A stretch of DNA of 64,000 bases from Selaginella moellendorffii (Eukaryota; Plantae; Lycopodiophyta): contig NW_003314380.1 in the NCBI RefSeq assembly GCF_000143415.4, positions 144,924 to 208,923 of the forward strand, given 5' to 3'. Shown here piece by piece: positions 4,289 through 36,160 of this stretch. Under the pieces are notes generated by a model. It did not search any database. It saw only the letters and a list, made by a program, of their open reading frames with translations, and was not told the DNA's origin. The position numbers and the translations under genes were made by a program. Positions within the stretch are counted from its first letter, which is position 1, and every line of letters starts with the position of its first letter.

Positions 4289-6878
4289 CTAATTACGACT
4301 TCCCACCAAACATTTGGTAAAAATGACACGCAAAAATGGACGGCCAAGATCTTTTAGCGCCATAGCCGAGATTTCTTCTCGAGAGTTTCTCTCCTTTACC
4401 AGGCTCTTTACCAAACTCAAGAAAAGCTCGCGAAGTAAAGCTAAAGCCATAAATCTAGAAATCGTCTTCAATCTCGTCACACTCGTCGGCAGCACTGGTG
4501 ATAACTTTTGGAGATCTCGGCTTCCAAGCGTCGCGAGTGAACGCGGAAATATTTCGCAGGAATGGAATGTACTCGGTTGCCTGCTCAACCGGACCAATAT
4601 TACTATCTCTCAACGACGCAAAGATCTCCCTCTGCAGCACGAACCGAGAAGAAAAAATAAAAACTTTTGCGTTAGCTCGGATCCACCAAAAGATGTGAAA
4701 GCATCACCTTCTTGCTTGATAGCGAGCGCTCAACTTGCCAAAGCATGGGACTTCTCAGCGTCTGCCATCTGTTTAAAGAACCAAGTTTAAGTTGTCCGGA
4801 GAAAGACAAGAGAAAAAGAAGCTACCTTCGAGGAGCAGGGTGTGTGTTACCAAAAAGAACACCCCGTGCAGCTAAAGAAGCAGCCGCAGCTTCTCCAAGT
4901 TGCGAAGCATTCGTCCATCCGGAATCTAAGAGGGGCCCTCTCGACTGCCAGGAAAATCTTGCACCAACGAGGTCTGCGTCACTTATGTACTGGATGATGT
5001 CCGCAACGTCTTCGATGGCATCGTCATCGACAAAGTCTGGCACTGCACAAAACGATCAAGGATTATAATCAAGAGCTGAGCCAGTACCATTCTCGTGGAG
5101 AAAAGAGACGAGTGTTGAAGCTTCGGCGTGCGACTGGGATATGACTAGCTCGGGATCTTTCATTTGCAAGGGTGGTCTTTGATACTGTTGCTGAAGTGGA
5201 CACGAAAGTTTTTCACCTGCAAAAAAGAAATGTCGGTCACGATTCTTAGACAACAACAAGTACCAACCTGATTCAGACTCCGCGTCGGCCACTCGCTTGT
5301 TGTGCAAGAATTTTCCAAGAGCATGAAATAGAGATAAGATGTGATCCCTACCGCATTTCGAACCATACTGTTCTTTGGGAGGTTCGTCGTCTGGAGTAGA
5401 AGAAGCTCCGCGAACTTGCTGGCGCTTTCGTCTTCTTGACTCGGATTTATCGGATTTCGAACTATTGAGGCAGAGAAATTGGAGATGTAGGATGGCGTGT
5501 CTGATATCTCCCGCGGCGGTTTGAGCAATTTCAGCCACCATTTCGCTAGGTACACGGCATTTCTTCGCTTTGACAAGATTAGCCAAAACTTTTTTAATGG
5601 CGTTTACAGTGATCGGGTTGAAGGCAATCTGTGAAATCGAACTGAACAAAGCGAAAGGAGAGAACAAAACAAAAAAAATACCTTGGAGGCTCCTCCACTC
5701 TCGAGTGTTTTTACTATCTCTCCCATGCATCGTGCCATTGAACTTCCTCGAAAACCATCGTCAGCCACATCTGTAACAACTATAACGGTTGGAAACTTCG
5801 CACCCGCAAGTAACTGGCGAAGTGATTGGAGTAGCTGCCTTTTCTTGTCCTCCCCATTTACTAAAGGTACGTCGTCAATGAGAACGAATTTCGTTCTCCT
5901 AACCGGAGCATTTAGTGGAAGAGAAGGAAACTTGGTTGTTTTGTCCAAAAATGTTTCAAAATCCTTCAGCTTTGAACTATATTTTGATCCTAAAAACCAT
6001 GTCGAGGAAAAAAATTCAGAAAGTTCTTGTCAAGTGTTACCTAGTGTATCATTGTGTAGATGCTCCTTCCAGAGAACAGGCGTTGGAGCAGTCCACTCAC
6101 AAAGCTCGGCATTCATCGTGTTGGCTAAGACTCGCACAACAGTCTACAAGATCCACCGTCTTTCAGAAACGAAGAAAGAAAGAAAAAAAACTGAAGGAAA
6201 GAAAACACTCGCCTTCTTACCGACACCAGCAGGTCCGGTGATCAACAAAAGCTTGCATGAACACTGCAGTGGCAAACAATTTCAAACGAATGTTACGCAA
6301 GAGTTAGTGAAGGGCGAGAGGAAAAAGAGGTTTTACCCAGCCTTACCCCCAAGGGGTTGTCGATTTGGGTTTCCATCCATTGTCTCACTTCTCCAACCTG
6401 GACGAAGAAAGAAAGAAAAAAAACCACTGTTAGAAAAGAGACAGGGAACGACCAAAGCAAAAAATTAACGTTGAAAGAACTAGAACCAAAAGAATCGTAG
6501 CGATGGTGAAGAATGTAAGTGATTTACCTTCTTGCTATGAACTGCTAGATCACTCACACAGGCCGGCCGAAACTTGTCGATCCAAAGATTATCAGAGTCT
6601 TGCCGATTATCTGGAAATCTTAGCTCGCATTGCATTCCATTGTCCATTCCAGCTCACCTCGAGTGCTATCCACCTGTAGAAACGCCATATCCTCCTCGAC
6701 TCGCTCGAACGGCGACCGCGAATCCTGCCGACGCCCGCATTGGGAAAAAAGGAAGCGAGAAGAGAAGGAACTACGAAACCTGGCTGCTCTTCTGCGAGGA
6801 GAGCGATAGCGGCAAGCGATCGTCGTCGTCATCGTCGCTCTCCTCGAGCGCCAAAACGTGGCGCTTACGCTTGGCCAT
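4289..6878 (-). CDS. RAD17: Cell-cycle checkpoint clamp-loader protein RAD17, multi-exon
   Basis: Exon pieces: LWIDKFRP..SDLAVHSKK, Walker A LLITGPAGVGK, EWTAPTP, VLIDDVP, IAFNPIT, GDIRHAILHLQF, GRDHILSLFHALGKFLHNKR, FLHEN, AARGVLFGN. ATG at 6878. Exact internal and 3' exon boundaries are approximate. Confidence 0.88.
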
Positions 6879-6969
6879 AACCTAGGAACCCTAGAAGCCT
6901 GCCACGCGTCAAAAATCTAGCCCATATAAGATAGAACGAAAGCCTCGCTTGTATCTATCTAGCGCAGCG

Positions 6970-7665
6970 ATGAGCTTCTTCGTGCTCTTGGCCGTCGTTT
7001 TCTCTTCCATTCTCGCGAAATCTCAAGCCCAGATTGCTGGTCAGTTCGATCGCTCGGTTTTTTCACTGGAATTCCCAAACTTCTCATTGTTTTCCTGCTA
7101 AACTCGTGTGTGTCTTTATGCAGAGCTTTGCAAGGAATGCAACACTCTCTTCGACAACAAACACAACCATTCGGTCGTAAAGTTTGGGCAGTTTATGTGC
7201 GAGAACTTCTGCGACGAGCAGGGAAAGGTGGTGGGGCTAAACTCCGTGGCTGTGAATGCGGAGGAGATGCTGGTGTGTGATAGATGCAGGAAGAGCAAGG
7301 GCCAGTTCATGTGCTCGCTGTGCAATCCAGAAGAGAGATCGAAGATCCAGGAAGAGGATGAAGACGACGACGATGACGATCTCCCCTATGGAGCTCGAAG
7401 AACACAGTTCTTTTGGACATCGAACGAGACCTCGTGTGACACCTGCCGGGATCGTCTGAAGTCGCCATTCTGCTTCCAGTGCAGCCTCAAGGAAGAGTGT
7501 CGAAGTTGCAACAACACCGTGGAATGCAAAACGTGCGGTGTCTTTCGGCAGCACACGGTTCATGTCTCGAAGCTGTGGCTCGGCGAAGACAAACCATCCA
7601 AAGGAGTGGATGATCTTGGAAATGATCACCAGAGTAATCCAAGCACCACCGGAACTAGAAGTTGA
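6970..7665 (+). CDS. Secreted CxxC-repeat cysteine-rich protein (CRP1), about 203 aa, unknown family
   Basis: Exon 1 (6970-7039) encodes signal peptide MSFFVLLAVVFSSILAKSQAQIA. Phase-1 GT-AG intron at 7040-7123. Exon 2 has 16 Cys, all in CxxC/CxxxC pairs, plus an acidic tract EEDEDDDDDD. TATA-like catataag at about 6923. Confidence 0.8.
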
Positions 7666-8579
7666 CATGTTGATACTCTAGCTTAAGTTCTTTTGGTAAT
7701 GCAAAAGAGCAAATTAAAGTTATTATTAATTAATATAAAATTCAGAACTACCTTATGAAATCACATTGCTCTTTTTTTACTTCCAGTTAATTTGCTTGAT
7801 CCATTTTCGTATTGATTTGTTTTTCAAAAAAGTGTTGTTATGAGAGTTTGTTTAATTGCAATTGGCTGAACCGCTCCAATCCTAGTTGCACTGCTACAAA
7901 CAAATTCAGGAGGGATGTGGAGCATGGGTTCTACCTGATAGTTTCAGCATCACTCCTCCTCACTGGCCCCTTAAACACTGGGCATTGCCTGTTAAGAACA
8001 GGCATGGGGCGGATCTCGAATGTTATATACTTTAATTTTTCTTATCTTTTTTAAAATAAAATTGAACCATGAGAAAAATACAAAAAAATCAAATGTACAA
8101 TGCCATTATTGGGCCCCTAACATTATAGTTATTTTTAATTATTGACGGTCCCTAGAATGACCTTTATAAACAACTCTGTTCTGTTGTGTTCTGTAAACTC
8201 ATGCTTCATTAAGTGATCTCTGGAGTTCTGATGGAATTTTCTACAATTTTGTAACTGTAACAATTGCATCACTTTTCGAGGTTGATATACGGACATAGAA
8301 AAAAAAAAAATGTATCAAATTCTGCATTGTCAACGCTATGTGGCTCAAGCTTCGCACGCAAATGTTCCACATAGAAAGAAGAAATAAATATAAATAAAGC
8401 TAAAGTTCTGTGACAAGGCTACATTCTATTCCCCTAATAAACAGTAATACAAAAAACAAATACACTCCTGTAGTGTCGTAGAAACCAACGTATCTCTCTA
8501 TAGTATTTAAACACACCATAGCTTCTCTCACACAAAACTTTATTTTTTTCTTCTTCTTTCCTCTTGTTAATATACATCA

Positions 8580-9197
8580 ATGGCGGGCTCTCTTTTCACT
8601 CTTTTCGCTCTTGCTCTTTTCTTCTTGATTGCAGCACAGCAGTCCCAAGCTCAAGAAGGTAAACTCAATCTAACTTTCTCAAACAAAATTCAATTCTAAC
8701 TTCTTCTTCTCGCAGACTATCTAAAACGAGTTTGCGACGGTTGCACCACCACAAAAAAACCGCTCCTTTGCAAGCTCTGTGACATTGCACAGAAGCAAGC
8801 CGCAGCAAAACCTCCAACCATGGTGACGGAGATCCCTCAAGAGGAAGCCAAGAAGGAGGCCCTGGGCATCGCCCAAGCCGCCAAGCCAATCCACTACACA
8901 AGTGCCAAGGTCGAGAAGAAGGACTGCGCGGAGAAATGCCCCAAAGGAAGCATTGTATACTACCTCGACGAGTGCACGGAGTGTAGGACGGAAGTCACCA
9001 CCCTTCCAGTCTATCCCGATGGAATGGACATCTCCAAGAGCTACTTTTGCACCAAACTTTGTGCCAGCAACTTCTTCAAGGGATCCAAGATGTGTAAGTT
9101 CTGCTGGGCAACATCGCCATCGCCATCTCCATTGCCTTCTCCGGCCCCGGCGCCGACGCGAATGCCAAAGAAGAAGAACCCGCCTAAACACCACTGA
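8580..9197 (+). CDS. Secreted CxxC-repeat cysteine-rich protein (CRP2), about 186 aa, with SP/AP-rich tail
   Basis: Exon 1 (8580-8658) encodes MAGSLFTLFALALFFLIAAQQSQAQE. Phase-1 intron at 8659-8715 joins in frame to the 8820-9197 ORF. 12 Cys in six pairs. Tail SPSPSPLPSPAPAP...PPKHH. Confidence 0.82.
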
Positions 9198-9701
9198 GTG
9201 TTTTTAGATCCAGCGTAGTTTAGTCGAGGAAATAAGGAAAAGCACGGACCTGTGTGTTGTTTCCAAGATAGGCCTAGTGTTTGATTCGATCTGGTTGTCT
9301 GTGCAGTAGTGATAGTTTGTAGTAGTTTGATTCTTCGCAATAAATCTGGCAAAACTTTCTTCCTTCCAATTTTGTTTCACGACCAAGTGCCGATCAGTCT
9401 GTTCCAGAGCCATGAGCGCAATGAAATCGCTGGAACGATGTTTTACCTCAGTCGTCTCGCCGCGCTAGTTTGTCCCTGCATTACCTTCACTTCGGTTCGT
9501 ATCGCCCAAGCGCACTTAGAGAGGACTTTAAATCTGTCTCAGCCTAGAACATAAAAGTTTGTCACGATTGTCAAAAACAGATGAAGATCACGAAGCGCCA
9601 AACCAAAGTTTTTGTCCAAATGTCCGATTGAATCATGACTTCTCCCAGACAAGGAGCTCCATAAATTCTCTTGTTCCGGGAAGCTTTATCCAATCTCTCG
9701 C

Positions 9702-10274
9702 ATGGATCTGGCAAGAGTTATTAGTATCATTTTGGTTCCCCATGCCTTGCTTCTCTTGATGCAGTCTCACGCACAAGGCTTACCAGGTTAGTGCTCTACA
9801 AAACTTCCGCGTTGATCATTCTTCTCGCTATCTGTGTCTCCAGATACATCTGAGCTTTTCGCTGAGATTCCAAGGCCTCTAGAAAACACAACTTGTGAGA
9901 AATGCACCGACCCAATGACAAACACTCAGTGCCTCGGTTGTAGCATCAAAAGCATTTGCCACAAATGTAACACCTCCATGGTATGCCTAACCTGCATGAA
10001 TTTCGGCATCGAGAACATGTTAGAGAGTTCGTTTGTCGAGAAAAGTATCAGCAAGGACCTGAAAGAAACTGTGTGTAAGCTCTTTTGTCGACGCGAGATG
10101 GACTTCTGGATATCAAGATCAGCGCTCTGCCGTTCTTGTAGCTCTTTACCTCCGTCCCACTCCCCGGTTGCATCTCCAATACCATCTCCCTTTTGGGGTC
10201 GTCCCAGACAGAAACGTCAAGCTCCAGCTCCAGCTCCAGCTCCAGCCCCTGGATATCACGGATACCATCACTAG
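9702..10274 (+). CDS. Secreted CxxC-repeat cysteine-rich protein (CRP3), about 171 aa, with SP/AP-rich tail
   Basis: Exon 1 (9702-9786) encodes MDLARVISIILVPHALLLLMQSHAQGLP. Phase-1 intron at 9787-9843. 12 Cys in six pairs. Tail QKRQAPAPAPAPAPGYHGYHH. Confidence 0.8.
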
Positions 10275-10344
10275 TTTAGCGCCCGAGAAGAAACATAATA
10301 ATTCACTGGCATACCTTTGTCAGTTGTCTGGAAATGAGAAAATT

Positions 10345-12585
10345 TTATGTCACTGCCTTTGTCACGTTTGAAAGTAGCACGTATGGTCCCGAAGAAGCAC
10401 CTTCTTTCACCCCAAAAATCTTTTGCGATATTCTCTGTGCTCGTTCCAAGTCATTTGAGGTCTTACAGCAGCCGAGCAAGCTTGTCCACGCTACCGGCGT
10501 TGGCTCAAACGGCATAAAACTGAGCACGTCCTCTGCCAGCTCCAGCTTTCCAACCCTCCCGAGAAGGTCCGCGATGCACATGAAGTGATCGGCACTGGGC
10601 TCTATACCGTGATCTTGTCTCATGACGACGAAGAACTCGATGCCGGTTTTGAGCAAGCCTGCGTGAGCACAAGCCGAGATTATGGCGATGAAGGTAATAT
10701 AGTCGGGAAGCTCACCTTGGAGGGTCATATCCTGGAAGACTTTGAGAGCTTCCGAGCTGCGAGCACACTCGGCATAAGCTGCGATCACGGCACTCCACGA
10801 AACGACGTTGGGATTGTTGATGGTGTTGAAAACGTCTCTCGCTCTTTGTAAACAGCCACCTTCCGAGTACATGGTGATGAGAGCGTTTTGGACTCTGATT
10901 TGCTTCTCTAGTCCAGTCCCGAGGATGCTCGCATGGACCATCTTCCCATCTGGTATCGAGCAGAAGTCCAAAACGCTCACAACTGTGATCGCTTCCGGCT
11001 TCACACCTTCCAAGTTCATGGTTTTGAACAGCCTGAAAGCCTCACTGCTGTGTCCATTCCGCGAGAGAGCTCCGATCATCACATTCCACGGTACTATATC
11101 CTGTCCTTGCGAACTTCCTGTGACTTCTTCGAAGACCTTCCATGCGTCTTGCAGGCTTCCACACCTCCCGTACATGTCCATAAGAGCGTTGGCAAGAAGA
11201 CCGCGTCTGGGAAGTCCTGCCTCTGTAACAACACCATCAACCATTCTAGCTTTAGAGAGCTCACCAAAGCAAGAGCACGCATCAATAGCACTTAGAAACG
11301 TTACCTCGGATGGAGCCGTGCCGTCGAGGTCCATAAGTCCCAGGATTTGCAAGCCTTCCTCTCCAAGCCCGTGCTGTGCAAACACTGCGATCATCGCAGT
11401 CCATGCTATAACGTCCGGGTTTTCAATCTCTCCTAGTGTTCTTCGAGCATCCCGCACGCTCCCACACTTTCCATACGTGTTAACAAGAGCAGTCCCGACG
11501 ACAACATCGCTTCCAAGTCCATCCTCGTAGACTCTCCCGTGTATTTCCCTGCAGCAACTCAAATCCTTAGAACCAGAGAAGCAATCAACGAGAGTGATAA
11601 AAGTGACTCTGTCTGGCTTCGTACCTGATAAACACATCAAGTGGAAGAGCTCCATCACGTTCTTGCCACTGCCAAGTTGACGAGCGTATGACGCGATCAT
11701 AGTGTTCCAAGAAACCACGTCCTTTGCAACCATGGAATCGAAGAAATTTCTAGCTTTGTCCGCGAAAGAGTTGCTGGCATAAACCCACAGCATGCTGTTC
11801 CACGAAACTATATCTCGCTCGGGCATCTCATCGAAAATCCTCCTCGCTTCGTCGGGACAGCAGTGGCCGAATAAGCCGATCAATCCATTTCCAATCTTCA
11901 AGTCAGCGGCAAATCCAGCACTCTCGATCATCGTCTGGAGGATCTTCACCTTAGCTCTTGAGCAGAAGCCCGCAGCGCGGGAGGAAACGTTGAGAATGAT
12001 CACAAAGGTGATAGAGTCCGGCTTAGATCCTTCCAAGTTCATGCGTCCAAAGTGCTCTATGGCCTGTCCCTCTTGCCCATTCTCGGCAAATGCGGCTAGC
12101 ATCGCGTTCCACGTCGTAGCATTCTTCCCAGGCGTCTTCTCAAATATCTCTTTCGCCCGCTCAATCTCCCCATAGCTAGCAAACGCTTTCACCATAGTCG
12201 TCCATGACACCACATTCCTCTCAGGCATCGCCTCAAACACCTCCACCGCCTCCCACAAATGCCCATTCTGGGCAAATGCCTCGATCAGGATTGTCCACGA
12301 GAACACATTGGGGCTCTTGATCCGGGCCAGCGCCGATCGACAACCCTGGACATCACCGCAGCGCCCATACATCTGGATCACCAGATTCCCCAGCAGTCTG
12401 TCGCCTCCCAGCCCGGATCCGAGGATGAGATCCTCCGCTTGCCTGGCCTCCGCGATCGCGCTGAGCTTGCCGCATCTCTGGACGAGCGCCGCGAGATTGG
12501 AGAAAATGGCGCCGCTAGCGCCGCTACCGTATTGCTGGATCGATTCTTTCACCCTGGATAGGGTTACCGCCAAGGGCTCATCCAT
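10345..12585 (-). CDS. PLS-class pentatricopeptide repeat protein ending in an E-type motif, no DYW domain
   Basis: Repeated (N/D)VVSWN.MI..Y, LI.MY..CG and P..ITF motifs. C-terminus DLLGRVG.L..AE..L..MPFEP...W.SLL..C...PYVLLSNV. First ATG at 12585. Confidence 0.92.
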   Translation of the reverse strand: MDEPLAVTLSRVKESIQQYGSGASGAIFSNLAALVQRCGKLSAIAEARQAEDLILGSGLGGDRLLGNLVIQMYGRCGDVQGCRSALARIKSPNVFSWTILIEAFAQNGHLWEAVEVFEAMPERNVVSWTTMVKAFASYGEIERAKEIFEKTPGKNATTWNAMLAAFAENGQEGQAIEHFGRMNLEGSKPDSITFVIILNVSSRAAGFCSRAKVKILQTMIESAGFAADLKIGNGLIGLFGHCCPDEARRIFDEMPERDIVSWNSMLWVYASNSFADKARNFFDSMVAKDVVSWNTMIASYARQLGSGKNVMELFHLMCLSGTKPDRVTFITLVDCFSGSKDLSCCREIHGRVYEDGLGSDVVVGTALVNTYGKCGSVRDARRTLGEIENPDVIAWTAMIAVFAQHGLGEEGLQILGLMDLDGTAPSEVTFLSAIDACSCFGELSKARMVDGVVTEAGLPRRGLLANALMDMYGRCGSLQDAWKVFEEVTGSSQGQDIVPWNVMIGALSRNGHSSEAFRLFKTMNLEGVKPEAITVVSVLDFCSIPDGKMVHASILGTGLEKQIRVQNALITMYSEGGCLQRARDVFNTINNPNVVSWSAVIAAYAECARSSEALKVFQDMTLQGELPDYITFIAIISACAHAGLLKTGIEFFVVMRQDHGIEPSADHFMCIADLLGRVGKLELAEDVLSFMPFEPTPVAWTSLLGCCKTSNDLERAQRISQKIFGVKEGASSGPYVLLSNVTKAVT

Positions 12586-12819
12586 GCTCAAAAGTGACAC
12601 GTAAGGGAGCCACCTTTAAGCCTAGTAGGATTCAAACAGCCACGTCCGCCTCCAGCTTGTAGCCACGTAGGATTACACTGCCATCGCATCTCCACGTACC
12701 AGAAAAATAGTGCCACGCAGGGCAGCCAGAAATTTTCTATGTAAAAATCTGTACAACCTATGGAGGTGTCACAAAAAGCTTTCCCTGTGACAATGAGCGT
12801 GAGAAATTTGGGCTGGTTC

Positions 12820-22985: not shown

Positions 22986-23296
22986 CCTTTTGTACCTGCA
23001 AAGAAGCTTGAAACGCGTGTCAAGAAAAGCTTTCAGTCAAAAAGCCTCTCCGACGTCTTGTCATACAGCTTTGATCGTCGGAAAGTCTCTACTCCTTCCA
23101 GATAGCGTTCTCTCAAGCGGTTCATGCCACACGCCCAAACTCTTTGAAGTCGGACCATATGTGCTGGACCATCATCTCCTGAGAACATACGATCCACTAC
23201 TTCGGCTTTGTTACTTAATATCTTTTAGAGACATTTGCGTCCATCGCACTGCTTCTCACAAAGTTCAGCATAGCCTTTGAAGAACGATCCAGCAGC
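22985..23296 (-). pseudogene. Degenerate duplicate of the NB-ARC-ARM 3' end (matches about 25470-25848)
   Basis: Collinear blocks tcttgtcatacag, ccttccagatagcg, tgtgctggaccatcatc, gagaacatacgatccactac, gcgtccatcgcactgctt and gatccagcagc, with many short deletions. Confidence 0.85.
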
Positions 23297-23963
23297 CACC
23301 GCGCCGATGCCAAGACTTCACCTCCATTTTGCTGGCCTGGTCGAGCTTGATCGCGCTGCCGGAGGTGAGGAGCATCCACAGCTGCGTCCACAAGAGCGGC
23401 TTCCAGCACCACCCTGATGAGCGCCTACGGCAAATGCGGCACCCTCGAGGACGCGTCCCGGATCTTCCTCTACAGCAGCAGCACCAATCCGCTCAACACC
23501 TCCCGCTGGAGCTCGATGATCGCCACCTCGGCCAGGCACGGCTGCGCGTCGGAGGCGGCCACCGGATGCAGCAGCGGGCCGACGACGTAACTCTGCTGTG
23601 CGTCCTCGCAGCTTGCAGCCACGGCCAAGGCCGAGTTCTTCGTCTCGATGATCCACGACTACCACGTTGGCCGGACGGACGACCACTGCTCTCGCATGGA
23701 AGGCTGGAGGATGCCGAGGAGCTCATTCGCAAGATGCCGTTTCAAGCTGCGGCGTCGGTGCGGATGATGCTGCTGGGAGCTTGTAGAACTCAAGGGATCT
23801 TCCTCGAGTAAAGGAGGCCAGTGCCAGGTGTCCGGTATCAGCCCCGCCAAGCACAGAGTTATATAGTGCTCTCCAATGTCTACGCGGAGAGTGGAACTAA
23901 ACAAGAGCACAGGTGTTCGCGAACGAGTTGCTTAGCTCAGGGAAAAAGAATGAGAAGTACCTG
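23296..23963 (+). pseudogene. Frameshifted duplicate of the 3' end of the PPR gene at 14122-16743 (matches 16019-16763)
   Basis: High identity to 16019-16763, including the stop codon and 3' flank, with multiple small deletions that break the frame. Confidence 0.92.
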
Positions 23964-23986
23964 TGAGCGCTTGTTATAAGCTTTGC

Positions 23987-24981
23987 TTACTGAGGATCGC
24001 TGTGGGGACTACCAGGAAGAGATGAGGTTTTTTTGATTGGATAAGGAGCAGTCGATGCGCATCTGGTGGAGAAGAAGAGAAAGAAATGACTTCTTTTATC
24101 TGGCTGGCAAGAAAAAATGAACGAAGCAACTAGTTACCTTTCTTTTCTCTTCTCCAGGAACCTTTGGAGAGAGGCTTTTCTAGCTTGTGGCAGTGCTGCG
24201 CAGTGATGAAACGTTTGGAGCTTGAAATAGCGAAGCAAGAATTTACCTGAACATTTTGAGTTTGACGAGGAGCTCTGGGATATGTTGTTGGCGGAGAGCA
24301 GTAGATTTACTGCAGCGGCGGCTGTTTCCGAGCTACCAGATGCCACGCTCCCGGCCAGAAGCATTATAGCTTGAGCCTAGAACATACAGTGGTCAAGAAA
24401 ATCGAAATAGAGTAAGAAGCAAAACTTACCTTATCGATAGGCATGCTTTCGTACACGGCCACTTTGCCATCGTATAACATTGTAAACTCTCCAGAGAACG
24501 CTGGCTGTTTTGGTGTTGGAGGCGACGAAGACGACGACGGCGGTCCGAGAGAAAGTGAAAGATCACCCGTCTTATCCGTGTTATGCGGAAGATTTGGAGT
24601 GAGCTTTAGAAGCACGCTCTGGCCTTGATTTTCAGTTGTTTTGTAATGGCTCCAAGGGCGAAGAGACCATCTTCCAGGATTACAAACGCCTGCAACGGTG
24701 AGAATAAGCGTCCAAAGGGCAGAAATTTCTGAAAGCTTACCAGCGGTCATGTAGCTTTGCATGAATCCAAATCCCTGTCTGGAACTCAACGCGTGCTCCG
24801 CATTGCGGCTACTGGATGCGCTTCCAAACGCTGCAGCGAGTTGGAAACCTGTCTGCCTGCTCATCTGCTGGAGTCGGGAAAGAGAAGCTGCTTCACCATC
24901 TCCATCCAATTGGAGAGAAACTCGAGAACCATTTGCCGCTCCACCGGAGAGATCTCTCGTCGATTCCATACCACTGGCCAT
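23987..24981 (-). CDS. JAZ: JAZ/TIFY jasmonate-signalling repressor; 5' end uncertain (upstream exons possible)
   Basis: ZIM domain EFTMLYDGKVAVYESMPIDK|AQAIMLLAG. Jas motif LPQARKASLQRFLEKRKER|CASTAPY, split by the conserved phase-2 Jas intron (donor 24137). Stop at 23987. Confidence 0.88.
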
Positions 24982-25526
24982 TGCAAACACCTCGCCTGCT
25001 AAAGCTTCAACTAGGTAGTATCTCCCCCCAGTTTATGTCTCGAACAACGACCAGACCTGGAAATCTGAGAGAGTACAGGGACTGCCTTTCTTTTGAGGAA
25101 CATCCATAGCCAGATGTGTGGTGCGGATCACTTTGAAGTTCAAAGGCTATACAGATGTGCGCAGACGTAGACGGGTGAATGTCCTCATGTACAAACAAGA
25201 AAATAATTCACTGACCTGAGGGTACCACATGCTTATACGCTCACAAAATTCACAGCACACGATCGTCGTAATCAAAGCAATCCATGCTTTCCCCGTGCCA
25301 TCAACATCGCATGTCTGTAAGGAAATTCACAAGAAAACAAAAGTCAGAACCGCTTAAATAGTTGTAATGGGAAACATACCTACAACCACGTTGTGCCCAC
25401 CGCGGCAAGCTCGGAAACAACTCTGAAAATAAGTGCCACTCTCGTCGCATAAACAACTCAATAAAGCTCGGTACCTTTCTTTGCAAAAGCGCTTGTCCAG
25501 CTTGAAACGAGTGTCGAGGAACACAC

Positions 25527-27913
25527 TTATGCCAGAGAAAAGCTGTCGTCGAAGAACGCTGCATGCCTCTCCGGCATCTTGTCATACAGGTTTGATCGCC
25601 GGAAAGTGTCGACGATGGTTGATCCTCCTTCCAGATAGCGCTCTCTTAAGACGTTGAGCTCCTTCATGCCGCACCCCGCAAACTCGTCAAAGTCGGATCT
25701 GATGTGCTGGACCATCATCGCCCCCAGGCCCGCCGAGAACATACGATCCACTACGTCCTGTCCACCGGCTTCGGCGATCGCAATCAAAGCGTCCATCGCA
25801 CTGCTTCCCACAAAGTTCCGCGTGGTCTTTGAAGAAGGATCCAGCAGCTTAACCAGCTCGTCGATGGGCATAATTCGCAGAGTTTCTTGAGCGTTCTCGG
25901 CAGCGGAAATAAACGTTGCCAGCTTCTTCAAGACGTGAACCATGCTCGACAGTGAGTCATCGTCGGGCTTCAGAAGTTGCCGGATATGATGAATTATTCC
26001 AGTGTCTATAAAACTGCTCAAGTTGTACTCCCAGTCGCTTGGAGTATAGTAGTTTGCGATGAAGCGGAGAGCCGACTGTGCTGCCTTTCCTCCGGGAACA
26101 AGTTCCGGAATAAGTCTCGGGATCCCGGGCCCCAGAAGTAGAACGAATGACTGGCTAGTCTCCGACCAGTCTTGATACGTCTTGCAAAGGGAGCACAGGT
26201 TTATAGTCGCGTCGAAAACGCTAGCCTGTAGAGCTTCGTTCCTTGACCCGAGGATCCTGAGAAGAGCATCCCCTGCCATTTTTCTCGGTCTTTCTTTCCC
26301 GTATCTATAAAGCCACGGAGCTACTGTGGCTAGCTCTATGGAGGAGTCCGGAAGTTTCAGGAGTTCCAAGCGTTCGTGGTCTTTCTCGGCAAGGTAGAGA
26401 GCGACCATGTCGTGAATAATGTAGCTGTAGGACGACTTATGCTTGCCGATCAAAGAGCCTTTCAGAAGAGCACCTATAGCCAGCCGAAAAGTTCCTTGCA
26501 GCCCAAGAGCACGCCACATTTCTTCGAGACATGGCTCTGGAATTGGTTCCACCCATGATAGTGCAGCAAAAGCGGTGAAAAACTCCCTCGTCTCCTTTTC
26601 CATCGCCTTCAGGCTAAACTCGAGGGAACCAAACACAGTAGCGGCGTTTGATACGTCGTAGTCCATGAGATCCTTGTTTGGAACAGGGGCTCGGCTGGCA
26701 TAAATCGAAAGATCGTTAATTGCCTGAAGCCATTGCTCGTGCCTGGATTCTCCTTCCAGAGCCTGACCGATCACAGTGACTGTGAGAGGATGATGTCCGC
26801 AACGATGTAGGAGTTCGTCAGCAAGTTCCTGAGAATACTCGTTAACAGCCGAAAGATTAAAAGGAAAAACTATACTTGTACCGGTAAGTCTTGCACTTGG
26901 CTGTGGTGCCGTAGGATTTCTTTTCCAACTTGAGCGACGTCTTCCTTCGTTACCTCCACTTTGTCAACGTCACTCGAAACCATCGCATATAGCCTTGTTG
27001 TCACCAGGTACTTACACTGATTCCCCTGGAGTTTCATGAACCGGATCACCACGTCTGCCTCCCACACATCGTCAACGATGATCAAGTAGTTCTTCTCCTT
27101 GAGCGTCTCCTCTAAGATAACGAAGGCTTCTTTCAAGCTTATGCCGTCGAGGTCGTGCTTCTTATAGCCCAGCTGCGTCCGTAGGAGGTGAACAATCTTC
27201 TCAGCAAAGTCTTTCTGGTACTCTTTAGTGTTGTTTCCCAATGCAGCTCTGCTACACCCATAGCCAAGCAAAACTTTCAAGCTGCCGTCTACGAATCTCG
27301 TTGGCAGAGAGCTTGCTCCCACAAAATGAGCAAGCGATGACTTCCCGATACCAGAGAGGCCGTGCACGAGGACAACCTTGTGAGGGCTGCTCGCGAGAAG
27401 ATCGCACACCTCCTGGACTTTAGAGCGCAATGGCTGGTAGCCATCCTCTGGTTGCAAAGTTAAGTAAGATGGTAGTCCTTGAGCGTACCTCTCCATGGCC
27501 TCTTCGATGCTGACTGGAACATTTTGCTGCTCAAACCATTTCTGCAGCTGGGATTCCATGGAGTATGCGATTCTCAGCAGCTCGTCCCCGACAGCTGCTG
27601 ACCAGCAGCACGCCATGACCCGTGTCAATCCTTTCCTGGAAGTGAGCCTCTCGGCCTTTCCTACCTCAGTGCTAAACTCCTGGACAAGCTCACGTAAATC
27701 TCGAAGCCTGGCCCGAAACTCGTCATTGTGAAGCTTGTTCGCGTACTTCTTCTCTGTCTTGGTCACGGAGCTCTCTAGCTGGGTCACTAACCTCTTCAAG
27801 TTCTGAAAGTTCGATGGCGCCTCATCTAGATTCACAGACGCGTCCTTGAGAGCCTTCACACCTTGAATGAAGCTTGTGATGACGCTGCTTGCGAGCACTG
27901 CCGCGTCCGCCAT
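25527..27913 (-). CDS. NB-ARC protein with N-terminal helical bundle and C-terminal ARM-like helical region, no LRR (resembles the rice RLS1-type NB-ARM family)
   Basis: P-loop VHGLSGIGKS, kinase-2 LIIVDDVW, RNBS-B KYLVTTR, GLPL-equivalent CGHHPLTV and MHD-equivalent IHD. Intron 26829-26881 joins the 347-aa and 415-aa ORFs in frame. Confidence 0.85.
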
Positions 27914-27932
27914 CGCTCAGGAGCTCTTGCAT

Positions 27933-28808
27933 CTACCGGAAACTCGGGGGGCTTCGACGAAATGACGCTGCCTTGGTTGACCCATGTACGGTAGAGACTA
28001 GCCAGCCGTCCAAAACTCCTTGGCGCAAGCCTTTCCTGCGTTTTCTTCCAGCTCTCGGGCATACCCAGCCACCACCCTCGAGACTATCTTCTTCGGGTGA
28101 AGGATCAATTCGTGTTGCATGACTATCGTTACTGTCGTGGTTTTTCTCTCCCCTTCGCATCATCCCCGTCACTAGATCCGACTTATCGTTCTTGCCTCGA
28201 GTATCCACCACTTCCTCTAACTCGGCCTCATTTACTACCATGATTCCGTGCGAGCAATCCTTTGCTTGAGTTTCCACCACTCCCACTACATCCGGTCTGT
28301 GTTCGTCGAGAGTTTTTAAAGCTTTTGCATCGTCAATCGCTTCCAAGCTAGCTCGGCTACTATCTGGATTTTTCGCACCAGTCGCCTAGAACAAAAACAT
28401 AAAGAGAAAACTTAGAAGCAACACAAACACACAAGAACCTCATACCTGTGAGTAAGTGTCCTCCTTTTGTAGGCCTGGACCACTAGTCTCTTTTTCTTTT
28501 TCTTTTTCTTCTTCTTCTTCGGAATTGCCAGGATCGGTAAAATCTCTCCGCAAGCACTCTCGATCATCTTCTATTTCCTCGTCGTCTATCTGTTCCTCCC
28601 TACTTCCTGCAGGGATTTCTAGCAAATTCTTGTTCGAAGAGTGTGATTGTCCTCTATCTCCCTCAAAATCTTGCGAATAATCTAGAGAAGAAGCCACATT
28701 GTAGCGAGGAGGCGAGAATAGATCTATCAAGGCCTCCGTGCCAAGGCATGAAAGAGGATCGCGGAGATATCTCTCATCTGTGAATCCAGAAATGCTATCC
28801 GGCTCCAT
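27933..28808 (-). CDS. Acidic, low-complexity protein of unknown function, 2 exons
   Basis: ATG at 28808. GT-AG intron 28386-28445 joins the two ORFs in frame. E/D-rich with no recognisable domain. Confidence 0.55.
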
Positions 28809-34868: not shown

Positions 34869-35700
34869 AATGGCACCCGGGATATGAGAGGAGCGCCACC
34901 TTCCTAGAAAACTAGAGAGAGAGAGAGAGAGAACGGACCATATCTCCAAGGCCGAGCATGAGATAATCGCCGACAGCGTTCCCGGCGGCGCCACCGATCA
35001 AATGCCTAGGAAACACAAGCTTGACGGGCATATCGAGCTGCTTGGTGATGGATCCCAGGCCCGGCAGATTGAGCTTGTCCGCGACGGTGCGCACTGGATT
35101 GGAAGCCTGCTGCGTCGCCACGGACACCATCACATTGGCGCCAAAGAACCTCTCAGACCAAAACACCCAAAACACGTCATACACGAACAGGCACGCCAGG
35201 AGGAGCGCGCAAACTCTCACGTTTGGGAGGCGGATGTGGCACACGAACGCCACGCAGATGGAAATCCCCAGGAGATTGTTGAGCAGCCAATGCCCCGAGA
35301 CCAGCCACAGCGCGATCGCGGTCGCGGTCGCGGCCGCCACGAGCGGGGCTTGGATTCTGGGAGAGCCCAGCCGGGCGGCGTAGGGCGCGATGCAAAACGC
35401 GAGCGATGCCGCGGCCATGGCGGTGGTGAGGAGGGTAATGATCTGCGAGACGGAGGAGAAGAGGTAGAACATGAGGAGGAGGCTGCAGGAGCTGGCGAGG
35501 GGGATCATGAGCGCCTGGGAGCTATCTAGGGTTACCGACGACGCGCCGATGATCATCTCCTTGCTGCTGCTGCCACCGCCGAGCGCGATCTCATGGCCGA
35601 GGGCTCTGTGCGCCGAGGCGAAGACTACCGCTGCGGCCGTCGAGATCAGCGCCAGAGAGGACGGCTCCAGCAGGTATTGGAGCTTCCAGAGCGGCTCCAT
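34330..35700 (-). CDS. SPPL1: Signal peptide peptidase-like 1 (GxGD intramembrane aspartyl protease), 3 exons
   Basis: MEPLWKLQYLLEP N-terminus, catalytic YD (FVYDVFWVF) and LGLGD, QPALLYL|VP motif, multiple TM helices. Confidence 0.9.
34836..34931. repeat. Two (GA)n microsatellites in SPPL1 intron 1
   Basis: GA runs at about 34836-34865 and 34914-34931. Confidence 0.9.
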
Positions 35701-35779: not shown

Positions 35780-36160
35780 TTAGTTAACTTCCTTTCTTAT
35801 ATTGTTTTCGAGCTCGTCTTCGGTTGGGATCTTGGGGATCAACGCTGCGCGGCATTGCACGCACGGGCTCCCGTAGTAGGAGATGCTCCCTGGATGGCAG
35901 TAGAGGCGGCAATCGCTGGGAATTAGCATTTTCCTCTGCTTGAGATTGAGGAGCTGGATCGTTTGACCCGCGAAATGCCGCGATCGATCTGGGCAAATTT
36001 GCGCGAGAATTGCTGCTGGAGAGACCAGTCGATCTATCAATGTGCCAATCGAACTGGTGATTCCAGGTCTCTCAAATCGATCAATACATGACAAACCTGG
36101 GATTGTTGGTGCATCCAACAAGACACAAAGAATTGACATGATCAATCCAAGGAACCCCAT
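35780..36160 (-). CDS. Small secreted Cys-hairpin protein (CRP4), single-module relative of CRP2
   Basis: Hydrophobic N-terminus MGFLGLIMSILCVLLDAPTIP. Phase-1 donor at 36096, with in-frame acceptors at 36016 or 35989. Module CRLYCHPGSISYYGSPCVQC matches CRP2 CAEKCPKGSIVYYLDECTEC with identical spacing. Confidence 0.62.
   Translation of the reverse strand: MGFLGLIMSILCVLLDAPTIPGLSCIDRFERPGITSSIGTLIDRLVSPAAILAQICPDRSRHFAGQTIQLLNLKQRKMLIPSDCRLYCHPGSISYYGSPCVQCRAALIPKIPTEDELENNIRKEVN

What the first reader, a model, noticed from the sequence alone, without database searches (positions are those of the whole stretch)
6970..10274. Tandem cluster of three secreted proteins built from shuffled CxxC/CxxxC modules: candidate undescribed peptide-precursor family
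Seen: the ORF track misses the first exons, but all three genes share one plan. A signal-peptide exon ending S(Q/H)AQ is followed by a phase-1 intron and an exon in which every Cys sits in a CxxC or CxxxC pair (16, 12 and 12 Cys). The modules are shared but permuted. Module A (VCDxC-x8-CxLC) is in the middle of CRP1 and at the N-terminus of CRP2. Module B (four CxxC with spacers 8-5-5, preceded by an N-x-T sequon) is at the C-terminus of CRP1 (SCDTCRDRLKSPFCFQCSLKEECRSCNNTVECKTC) and the N-terminus of CRP3 (TCEKCTDPMTNTQCLGCSIKSICHKCNTSMVCLTC). Module C (CxxxC-x10-13-CxxC) occurs twice in CRP2 and once in CRP3. Known: this spacing does not fit defensins, thionins, LTPs, RALFs, EPFs or snakins. 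The closest analogy is alpha-hairpinin precursors (CX3C-Xn-CX3C repeats with spacers). Inference: a lineage-specific, modular secreted system of disulfide hairpins or metal-binding units, for defence, reproduction or metal handling.
Basis: partly seen in the sequence, partly recalled or inferred. Interest (0 to 1): 0.85.

Follow-up and report, generated by a model that had tools for sequence, protein, structure and literature searches.

The report
Orphan secreted cysteine-rich proteins, Selaginella
Three neighbouring two-exon genes of the lycophyte Selaginella moellendorffii encode secreted proteins whose cysteines all sit in CxxC/CxxxC pairs; no relatives were found elsewhere, which makes them an undescribed but unsurprising lineage-specific family, and two of them carry arabinogalactan-type proline-rich tails.

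Summary
Window 6970-10274 (+) holds three two-exon genes of 203, 186 and 171 aa. Each has a signal-peptide exon, a GT-AG phase-1 intron at the stated coordinates, and 16, 12 and 12 Cys, all in CxxC/CxxxC pairs (shuffle p <= 1e-5 each). The window is Selaginella moellendorffii scaffold GL377684.1. CRP1 and CRP2 are already annotated as hypothetical proteins (SELMODRAFT_429711/429712). CRP3 is annotated on neither haplotype but is intact on both. Pooled dN/dS between haplotypes is 0.39.

No relative was found in Pfam, PDB sequences, 1.84 billion protein cluster representatives, metagenome contigs or prokaryote genome contigs. So "undescribed, lineage-specific, secreted" is supported as far as these databases reach.

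"Shuffled/permuted" is an over-reading. The module order C'<A<B<C is the same in all three proteins. Only modules B (p=0.001) and A (p=0.01) are alike beyond their Cys; "module C" is defined by spacing alone. The peptide-precursor and metal-binding readings have no positive support.

It also missed a fourth, weaker member at 35780-36160 (-). Both AlphaFold models were unusable (pLDDT 38-44). Function is untested. Interest is modest.

The parts
6970..7039 (+). CRP1 exon 1: signal peptide (…AKSQA|QIA), ends in phase 1
   Evidence: Identical model length to SELMODRAFT_429711/427014.
7040..7123 (+). CRP1 intron, 84 nt, GT…AG, phase 1
   Evidence: Retention runs into a stop at 7099-7101.
7124..7665 (+). 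CRP1 exon 2. Holds module C' (CxxC-x19-CxxxC, 7129-7212), module A (7276-7323), the acidic run EEDEDDDDDD (7351-7380), module B (7435-7536, four CxxC with spacers 8-5-5) and a non-Pro tail.
   Evidence: Sequons NHS, NET and NNT.
8580..8658 (+). CRP2 exon 1: signal peptide (…QQSQA|QE)
   Evidence: No differences between haplotypes.
8659..8715 (+). CRP2 intron, 57 nt, GT…AG, phase 1
   Evidence: 12.7% divergent, with a 2-nt indel between haplotypes, against 0-3% in the exons.
8716..9197 (+). CRP2 exon 2. Holds module A (8733-8780), module C1 (8925-8984), module C2 (9048-9104) and the Ser-Pro/Ala-Pro tail (9114-9158), followed by the basic end KKKNPPKHH.
9702..9786 (+). CRP3 exon 1: signal peptide (…MQSHA|QGLP)
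9787..9843 (+). CRP3 intron, 57 nt, GT…AG, phase 1
   Evidence: Retention meets a stop right after the donor site.
9844..10274 (+). CRP3 exon 2. Holds module B (9894-9995), module C (10074-10139) and the Ser-Pro then (Ala-Pro)5 tail (10149-10250), followed by GYHGYHH. The gene is not annotated on either haplotype.
35780..36160 (-). Possible fourth member (ORF4). It has a hydrophobic N-terminus, a candidate 63-nt phase-1 GT-AG intron (36096-36034) and one module C (35852-35911, DCRLYCHPGSISYYGSPCVQCR) homologous to CRP2 module C1. No Pro tail. Cys count outside the N-terminal hydrophobic segment is 5 if spliced, 6 if unspliced.
   Evidence: (p=0.0002 on non-Cys residues). The unspliced product is not on record.

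Best explanation
This is an old, lineage-restricted family of secretory-pathway glycoproteins of Selaginella moellendorffii, arranged as a tandem trio with one dispersed weak member. Shown: each gene has a short exon encoding a hydrophobic signal-like N-terminus, a phase-1 intron, and one exon encoding a mature region in which all Cys occur as CxxC/CxxxC pairs grouped into 4-Cys or 8-Cys units. The genes are intact on both haplotypes. Inferred: the signal peptide is cut after S-Q/H-A, leaving an N-terminal Gln. In the oxidising ER each 4-Cys unit closes into a two-disulfide hairpin. Module B (CxxC-x8 followed by three 9-residue CxxC-x5 turns) closes into a four-disulfide ladder. The conserved sequons of CRP1 and CRP3 are N-glycosylated. 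The Ser-Pro/Ala-Pro tails of CRP2 and CRP3 are hydroxylated and carry arabinogalactan, which would make those two chimeric AGP-like wall or apoplast proteins with a novel Cys-rich head. The head is most likely a stable binding or antimicrobial module that acts as part of the intact protein. The differences between the three genes are best explained by differential loss or gain of units along one ancestral order (C', A, B, C, Pro-tail), not by shuffling.
For: - Gene models and Cys framework. Non-randomness.
- Secretion features: maximum Kyte-Doolittle (11-residue window) of 2.65-3.05 at the N-terminus; maximum 19-residue hydropathy <=0.96 elsewhere; S at -3 and A at -1; sequons at matching positions of module B in CRP1 and CRP3.
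- Real genes: two are annotated with identical lengths. All three ORFs and all 40 Cys are intact on both haplotypes. Pooled dN/dS is 0.39, Fisher p=0.019. The CRP2 intron is four or more times as divergent as its exons (12.7% against 0-3%) and carries a 2-nt indel.
- Age: the paralogues share no DNA similarity, yet all keep the same gene plan.
- Homology of units beyond their Cys: module B p=0.001, module A p=0.01, CRP2-C1 versus ORF4 p=0.0002. The C-terminal stretch of CRP2 and CRP3 (last CxxC plus Pro tail) aligns at E=4e-5.
- AG glycomodules: 13 in CRP2 and 14 in CRP3, contiguous, with no SPP+ extensin motif. This exceeds the criterion of at least 3 glycomodules spaced <=10 residues in PMC5266747.
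- No match to any known family.
Against: No expression or splice-junction data could be consulted. No signal-peptide predictor was run, only rule-based checks. Both AlphaFold models were unusable (pLDDT 44 and 38), so the disulfide-hairpin geometry is an analogy, not a result. The dN/dS estimate rests on 29 substitutions; for CRP3 alone it is 0.85 from 4 substitutions. That all Cys are conserved between haplotypes is not in itself significant. CRP1 has no Pro tail, so the AGP reading covers only two of the three proteins. Whether other Selaginella proteomes or transcriptomes are in the searched databases is unknown, so 'lineage-restricted' may partly reflect sampling.
Confidence: 0.6

Rival explanations
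1. Multi-module peptide precursors. The proteins would be cleaved in the secretory pathway or apoplast, releasing separate 2-5 kDa disulfide-stapled peptides, as happens with modular alpha-hairpinin precursors.
For: The units are separated by long Cys-free linkers of 37-48 residues. CRP1 has an acidic run between modules A and B. Such runs are known as pro-domains in thionin and class II defensin precursors (background knowledge; PMC5507927 text). Dibasic sites lie just upstream of units: KR before CRP2 module A, RR before CRP1 module B, and KR inside the CRP3 tail. Modular CRP precursors exist in plants (PMC11591084).
Against: The units within one protein are not repeats of each other. No linker or cleavage motif recurs. 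Module C units share nothing beyond Cys spacing. The alpha-hairpinin motif is absent. N-glycan sequons inside a unit and AGP-type tails are typical of proteins that function intact. No peptidomic data were available.
Confidence: 0.15
2. Metal-binding proteins. Under this reading the CxxC pairs coordinate Zn or Cu (rubredoxin-knuckle or zinc-ribbon-like sites) rather than forming disulfides, and the proteins handle or sense metals in the secretory pathway or wall.
For: CxxC-xn-CxxC is the classic tetrahedral Zn site. The only matches of module B, all weak, are to intracellular zinc fingers: Double zinc ribbon E=0.39 and the melanophilin FYVE-type and TRIM/AMFR RING fingers at E=0.5-3.7. CRP2 and CRP3 end in His-rich residues (KHH, GYHGYHH).
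Against: All those matches are at chance level and below the curated cut-offs. A signal peptide, conserved N-glycosylation sequons and Hyp-glycomodule tails place the Cys in the oxidising secretory pathway, where paired Cys normally form disulfides (established knowledge). Every unit has an even number of Cys.
Confidence: 0.1
3. Not functional. The ORFs would be decaying relics or gene-prediction artefacts with no transcribed, translated product. This applies most to CRP3, which is unannotated, and to ORF4.
For: CRP3 is called on neither haplotype. Its dN/dS of 0.85 is uninformative. Its GC3 (0.48) is lower than that of CRP1 and CRP2 (0.61-0.64). ORF4 has an odd Cys count if spliced, and its unspliced product is not on record. 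No expression data were available.
Against: The paralogues are too diverged for any DNA match, yet each keeps an open frame, a signal-peptide exon, the same intron phase and a full set of paired Cys on both haplotypes. Pooled dN/dS is below 1. On the window's haplotype CRP3 probably went uncalled because a PPR gene model was extended antisense into it.
Confidence: 0.1

Closest known systems
Alpha-hairpinins and their modular precursors (CX3C-X4-20-CX3C, helix-loop-helix with two disulfides)
   Same: Both are secreted plant proteins built from 4-Cys units made of two closely spaced Cys pairs 8-19 residues apart. Several units can sit in one precursor behind a single signal peptide. Sequence conservation lies mostly in the Cys.
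   Different: No unit here has CX3C on both arms (0 motif matches). The units are CX2C-X8-CX2C, CX3C-X10-13-CX2C or CX2C-X19-CX3C. An 8-residue loop is short for a helical hairpin. The units within one protein are not repeats. There is no vicilin/cupin part. N-glycan sequons and AGP-like tails are present. No homology was detected.
Chimeric ('other') arabinogalactan proteins, e.g. xylogen-like (nsLTP-AGP), phytocyanin-like and Ole e 1/PAC-domain AGPs
   Same: In CRP2 and CRP3: a signal peptide, a folded Cys-containing domain, and a short PAST-rich stretch of non-contiguous Ser-Pro/Ala-Pro glycomodules (13-14 dipeptides). AtAGP31-type non-classical AGPs also have a His-rich stretch (background knowledge).
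   Different: The folded domain matches none of the domains used to define chimeric AGP subfamilies (no Pfam hit). There is no GPI-anchor signal. CRP1 lacks the tail altogether. Glycosylation is untested.
Generic lineage-specific plant cysteine-rich secreted proteins (defensin-like, GASA/snakin, thionin, LTP, RALF, EPF, DUF26, STIG1)
   Same: Small secreted proteins with an even number of Cys, a two-exon gene with a phase-1 intron after the signal peptide, tandem gene clusters, and fast sequence divergence with a retained Cys framework.
   Different: The Cys framework fits none of these classes. There are no CC or CXC motifs, and no Pfam model scores even at E<=10. The proteins are larger (147-183 aa mature) and multi-unit.
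Intracellular zinc ribbons and RING/FYVE cross-brace fingers
   Same: Runs of CxxC pairs with spacers of 5-20 residues. The only alignments obtained, all weak, are to these.
   Different: E-values are 0.4-3.7, which is chance level. There are no His ligands in the pattern. A signal peptide and glycosylation motifs put these proteins in a compartment where such sites are not expected.

Membership tests
Alpha-hairpinins | Cys motif C1-X3-C2-X4-20-C3-X3-C4 (PMC11591084) | tested here: not met
   A regex on the three proteins gives 0 matches. Every unit has at least one CX2C arm.
Alpha-hairpinins | Helix-loop-helix fold with C1-C4 and C2-C3 disulfides | tested here: inconclusive
   AlphaFold2 models had mean pLDDT 44 and 38. 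Helices over the CX3C arms were predicted only at low confidence. Disulfide mapping cannot be done here.
Alpha-hairpinins | Precursor of repeated, similar modules (or a vicilin N-terminal region) that is proteolytically processed | tested here: not met
   Units within one protein are dissimilar beyond their Cys. No cupin/vicilin domain is present. Processing itself cannot be tested here.
Chimeric arabinogalactan proteins (CRP2 and CRP3 only) | N-terminal signal peptide | tested here: met
   Rule-based check only: hydrophobic core with KD(11) of 2.65-3.05, S at -3 and A at -1. SignalP was not available.
Chimeric arabinogalactan proteins (CRP2 and CRP3 only) | At least 3 AG glycomodules (A/S/T-Pro or Pro-A/S/T) spaced <=10 residues, without extensin Ser-Pro2-5 repeats (PMC5266747) | tested here: met
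   CRP2 has 12 contiguous dipeptides at residues 160-174. CRP3 has 14 at residues 132-164. No SPP+ motif occurs. CRP1 has only 3 scattered dipeptides and does not qualify.
Chimeric arabinogalactan proteins (CRP2 and CRP3 only) | Hydroxyproline carrying type II arabinogalactan (beta-Yariv reactive) | not testable with these tools
   This needs biochemistry on the expressed protein.
Known plant CRP classes with Pfam models (defensin, thionin, nsLTP, GASA/snakin, RALF, EPF, DUF26/Gnk2, STIG1, hevein) | Match to the family profile at or near the gathering score | tested here: not met
   hmmscan against Pfam-A at E<=10, using the exon-2 products, the full-length alleles P0003 and P0004, and module B alone. 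None of these families is listed. The best hits (Costars, CofB_pilin, DUF3795, DZR) are all far below their cut-offs.
Zinc ribbon / RING / FYVE zinc fingers | Significant profile or sequence match and a cytosolic or nuclear location | tested here: not met
   E=0.39 to Pfam DZR (11.4 bits against a cut-off of 27.3). E=0.5-3.7 to PDB RING/FYVE chains. The proteins have signal peptides.

The most novel reading that the evidence does not exclude
The Cys-rich head, and module B in particular (CxxC-x8 followed by three 9-residue CxxC-x5 turns with an embedded conserved N-glycan site), is a new disulfide-ladder fold. It would found a lycophyte-specific class of secreted proteins that has no counterpart among described plant cysteine-rich peptide or chimeric AGP families, and it may have a defence or cell-to-cell signalling role.
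Probability: 0.3. Interest if true: 0.5.

Novelty: new variant of a known kind. Interest (0 to 1): 0.3.

Why it matters
Plants carry hundreds of fast-evolving secreted cysteine-rich protein families, and most described ones come from seed plants. If transcripts and secretion are confirmed, these genes would add a lycophyte family with a Cys framework matched by no curated family here. They would also add a new head domain to the chimeric arabinogalactan proteins, and an unannotated gene (CRP3) to the S. moellendorffii gene set. The finding does not bear on a long-standing open question, and orphan families of this kind are expected. Its value lies mainly in annotation and as a candidate for structural and antimicrobial or signalling screens.

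Tried and rejected
1. Word-indexed homologue searches with each exon-2 product. These returned only the other-haplotype alleles of CRP1 and CRP2, and nothing for CRP3.
2. Exhaustive phmmer of CRP1 against 1.84e9 cluster representatives. It found only itself. Only one such job was allowed, so CRP2, CRP3 and a module profile were not searched this way.
3. Pfam at E<=10 and PDB sequence searches, including a two-sequence profile of module B. Only chance-level hits came back.
4. Back-translated pattern scans of metagenome contigs and prokaryote genome contigs with module B. No confirmed relative was found.
5. AlphaFold2 on CRP3 and CRP1, each with the six-row paralogue alignment. pLDDT was 44 and 38, so fold search was not run, because it would have been meaningless.
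6. The MAFFT global alignment suggested that CRP2 module C1 is a degenerate module B. This was rejected: a shuffle of non-Cys residues gives no support (p=0.91-0.98).
7. The idea that module A equals the first half of module B. The Cys spacing is the same, but non-Cys similarity is not significant (p=0.17-0.66), so this stays open.
8. Literature search on the locus tags, UniProt and LOC identifiers. No paper was found.
9. Attempts to see the annotation around ORF4, or its other-haplotype copy, by exact-protein look-up of ORF4 and two nearby ORFs. None is on record.
10. The bacterial promoter/terminator scan is irrelevant for a plant locus.
Full report
**What is there**

Reading window 6700-10500 and splicing the proposed exons gives three complete coding sequences on the + strand.

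| Gene | Exons | Length | Cys |
|---|---|---|---|
| CRP1 | 6970-7039 + 7124-7665 | 203 aa | 16 |
| CRP2 | 8580-8658 + 8716-9197 | 186 aa | 12 |
| CRP3 | 9702-9786 + 9844-10274 | 171 aa | 12 |

They are GT-AG, 84, 57 and 57 nt long, and all phase 1. Each contains an in-frame stop, so splicing is needed to reach the Cys-rich exon.

Every Cys has a partner at i+3 or i+4. In 200,000 composition-preserving shuffles of each mature protein this was reached 0, 1 and 2 times. Over all six frames of the 64 kb window, the pattern C-x2-3-C-x5-20-C-x2-3-C occurs 15 times. Twelve of these are in the three genes. The rest are one on the antisense strand of CRP3, one in a RING-finger gene and one in a further ORF at 35.8 kb.

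**Where it comes from and what is already on record**

The exon-2 products of CRP1 and CRP2 hit hypothetical proteins SELMODRAFT_427014 and SELMODRAFT_427015 of Selaginella moellendorffii at 98% and 97% identity.

The cluster look-up shows a second pair, SELMODRAFT_429711 and 429712, of the same lengths. Contig look-ups place that pair on scaffold GL377684.1, to which the window belongs, and the first pair on GL377652.1, fetched as L001. The two scaffolds are collinear and about 97% identical. They are the two assembled haplotypes of this genome.

So two of the three genes are existing "hypothetical/uncharacterized protein" entries with exactly the exon structure inferred here.

CRP3 is different. 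No protein in the 5.8-billion-sequence collection matches it, and no gene is called at its position on either haplotype. On the window's haplotype the neighbouring 325-aa PPR model reaches down to about window 9926. That puts its last exon antisense inside CRP3 exon 2, which probably blocked a call there. None of the identifiers appears in the searchable literature.

**Are they real genes?**

- All three reading frames, all splice sites and all 40 Cys are intact on both haplotypes.
- The haplotypes differ by 29 substitutions in the three coding sequences. Pooled dN/dS is 0.39 (Fisher p=0.019). CRP1 gives 0.38 and CRP2 0.31. CRP3 gives 0.85, but from only four changes.
- The CRP2 intron is 12.7% divergent and carries a 2-nt indel, against 0-3% in its exons. 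This fits a non-coding intron.
- Amino-acid changes in the signal-peptide exons are mostly hydrophobic-for-hydrophobic: V/F in CRP1, I/V and M/V in CRP3, plus A/S just after the predicted CRP1 cleavage site.
- The three genes share no detectable DNA similarity, so the duplications are old. Yet each copy keeps the signal-peptide exon, the intron phase and a complete set of paired Cys, which argues for long-term maintenance.
- A TATA-like element lies 40-80 nt upstream of the CRP2 and CRP3 start codons, and an AATAAA-type signal lies downstream of each gene. For CRP1 the scripted pattern found none; a TATAAG about 45 nt upstream of its ATG was seen only by eye.

No RNA-seq, EST or proteomic data could be consulted, so transcription remains unshown.

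**Secretion**

Each N-terminus has a hydrophobic core (maximum Kyte-Doolittle over 11 residues of 2.65-3.05). It is followed by S-Q-A|Q, S-Q-A|Q or S-H-A|Q, which satisfies the -3/-1 small-residue rule. No later segment approaches transmembrane hydrophobicity (maximum 19-residue mean <=0.96). There is no K/HDEL and no hydrophobic C-terminus.

CRP1 and CRP3 share two N-x-S/T sequons at matching places of module B. One sits just before the first Cys. The other sits directly after the sixth Cys (C-N-N-T-V-E-C in CRP1, C-N-T-S-M-V-C in CRP3).

These are rule-based checks, not a predictor's output. Together with the gene plan they make secretory-pathway entry the reasonable reading.

**Modules: shared, but not shuffled**

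I tested similarity beyond the Cys framework by shuffling only the non-Cys residues of one partner.

| Comparison | p |
|---|---|
| Module B, CRP1 vs CRP3 | 0.001 |
| Module A, CRP1 vs CRP2 | 0.01 |
| Module A vs first half of module B (same CxxC-x8-CxxC spacing) | 0.17-0.66 |
| The three "module C" units against each other | 0.47-0.89 |
| CRP2 module C1 vs either module B (suggested by MAFFT) | 0.91-0.98 |

Module B also scores by tblastn at E=3e-7 to 5e-7 within the window. Module C is therefore a spacing class (3-10/11/13-2), not a demonstrated homologous unit.

What does align between CRP2 and CRP3 is the last CxxC plus the proline-rich tail (E=4e-5).

The layouts are:
- CRP1: C'-A-B
- CRP2: A-C-C-tail
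- CRP3: B-C-tail

All three fit one linear order, C'<A<B<C<tail. Nothing needs to be permuted. Differential loss or gain along an ancestral arrangement is the simpler account for old tandem duplicates.

Module B itself has an inner period. After CxxC-x8 come three 9-residue turns, C-x-x-C-[S/N]-x-[K/T]-x-x (CFQCSLKEE / CRSCNNTVE / CKTC in CRP1 and CLGCSIKSI / CHKCNTSMV / CLTC in CRP3).

**Proline-rich tails**

- CRP2 ends …TSPSPSPLPSPAPAPTRMPKKKNPPKHH.
- CRP3 ends …LPPSHSPVASPIPSPFWGRPRQKRQAPAPAPAPAPGYHGYHH.

Counting A/S/T-Pro and Pro-A/S/T dipeptides gives 13 and 14, nearly all contiguous, with no Ser-Pro2-5 extensin motif. CRP1 has three scattered ones.

[quoted passage not shown] CRP2 and CRP3 meet it. 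By that definition they would be "other chimeric AGPs" with a head domain not among the listed subfamilies. Whether the prolines are hydroxylated and glycosylated is untested.

**Comparison with known families**

- Pfam-A at E<=10 returns nothing relevant for the exon-2 products, the full-length alleles or module B alone. The best scores (Costars, CofB_pilin, DUF3795, Double zinc ribbon) are all far below their cut-offs. No defensin, thionin, LTP, GASA, RALF, EPF, DUF26, STIG1, hevein or furin/VSP-type model appears.
- PDB chain sequences give only E>=0.4. A profile of module B picks up RING and FYVE-type zinc fingers at E=0.5-3.7, which is chance level.
- phmmer of CRP1 against every one of 1.84 billion cluster representatives finds only itself at E<=0.001.
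- Pattern scans of JGI metagenome contigs and of one genome per prokaryotic species with module B give no confirmed relative.
- The alpha-hairpinin motif C-X3-C-X4-20-C-X3-C, as defined in PMC11591084, has zero matches.

Alpha-hairpinins remain the nearest analogue in design, because they too pair two close Cys pairs across a loop. These proteins are not members of that family.

**Structure**

AlphaFold2 with the six-row paralogue and haplotype alignment gave mean pLDDT 44 for CRP3 and 38 for CRP1, with no residue above 70. The only faint signal is helices over the CX3C-bearing arms of C' and C, at pLDDT 50-61. I did not run structure searches on these models. The disulfide-hairpin and ladder picture is therefore an inference. 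It rests on three things: an even Cys count in every unit, the secretory location, and analogy with cystine-stabilised hairpins.

**Mechanism, with rough odds**

- Most likely (about 0.6): intact secreted glycoproteins whose Cys-rich units are disulfide-stapled mini-domains. CRP2 and CRP3 would additionally carry arabinogalactan on their tails and reside in the wall or apoplast.
- Peptide-precursor reading (about 0.15): in its favour are the long linkers, the acidic run in CRP1 and dibasic sites just upstream of some units. Against it are unit heterogeneity, the lack of any recurring cleavage motif, and glycosylation features typical of proteins that function intact.
- Metal-binding reading (about 0.1): it rests only on the look of CxxC pairs and on chance-level zinc-finger hits. 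It conflicts with the secretory features.
- Non-functional relics (about 0.1): argued against by conservation of the gene plan across old paralogues and both haplotypes, although CRP3 and ORF4 are individually less secure.

**A fourth member**

tblastn of CRP2 picked up window 35849-35914 on the minus strand. The ORF there (ATG at 36160, stop at 35780) starts with a hydrophobic stretch. It contains DCRLYCHPGSISYYGSPCVQCR, against CRP2's DCAEKCPKGSIVYYLDECTECR. Similarity of the non-Cys residues is significant (p=0.0002).

A 63-nt GT-AG intron in phase 1 directly after the hydrophobic exon (36096-36034) would reproduce the family plan, but the ORF also reads through unspliced. The ORF has no Pro tail, and outside the N-terminal hydrophobic segment it has 5 Cys if spliced or 6 if unspliced. 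Its unspliced product is not on record.

So the family is not confined to the tandem trio. This copy may be degenerate.

**Verdict**

The sequence observation is correct and well above chance. The reading "secreted, undescribed, lineage-restricted" is supported within the reach of the databases. "Shuffled modules", "peptide precursor" and "metal-binding" are not.

Two of the genes are already deposited as hypothetical proteins. The third is a genuine annotation gap.

Lineage-specific secreted Cys-rich families are common in plants, and nothing here bears on function. I therefore rate this a new variant of a known kind with modest interest.

Noticed in passing
window 9702-10274 (+); PPR model reaching about window 9926 (-): CRP3 is annotated on neither S. 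moellendorffii haplotype. On the window's scaffold (GL377684.1) the neighbouring 325-aa PPR gene model spans about 9926-11404. That places an exon antisense inside CRP3 exon 2. On the other haplotype the same model stops at the equivalent of window 10345. This is probably a gene-prediction artefact that masked CRP3.
   Followed up: partly
window 35780-36160 (-): An unannotated ORF with a hydrophobic N-terminus and one CxxxC-x11-CxxC unit clearly homologous to CRP2 module C1 (p=0.0002). A phase-1 63-nt intron at 36096-36034 is possible. It may be a fourth, possibly degenerate, family member about 25 kb from the trio.
   Followed up: partly
window 10345-12600 (-): One uninterrupted 751-aa PPR reading frame is split into two gene models (325 + 358 aa) on both haplotypes. 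This may be an annotation split of a single PPR gene.
   Followed up: no
window about 23200-28800 (-); L002:19072-22547 (-): The other-haplotype annotation has a 1346-aa model combining NB-ARC with tify and Jas (JAZ-type) motifs. NB-ARC is confirmed in window ORF 26873-27913 (-). The tify/Jas part was not located in the four downstream ORFs (23321-26774) or the two upstream ones (27936-28808) that were scanned. An NLR with an integrated JAZ-like domain in a lycophyte would be worth a separate look, if the model is not a fusion artefact.
   Followed up: partly
window 7666-8579: The AT-rich spacer between CRP1 and CRP2 (GC 0.33) carries about 140 columns of indel between the two haplotypes, including a block at about 7944-8025 present only in the window. 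No convincing terminal inverted repeats were found. The origin of the indel is unexplained.
   Followed up: partly
window 34912-35700 (-): The ORF next to ORF4 contains a YDVFWVF motif and multiple hydrophobic spans. By eye it looks like the first exon of a signal-peptide-peptidase/presenilin-type aspartyl protease. This was not tested.
   Followed up: no
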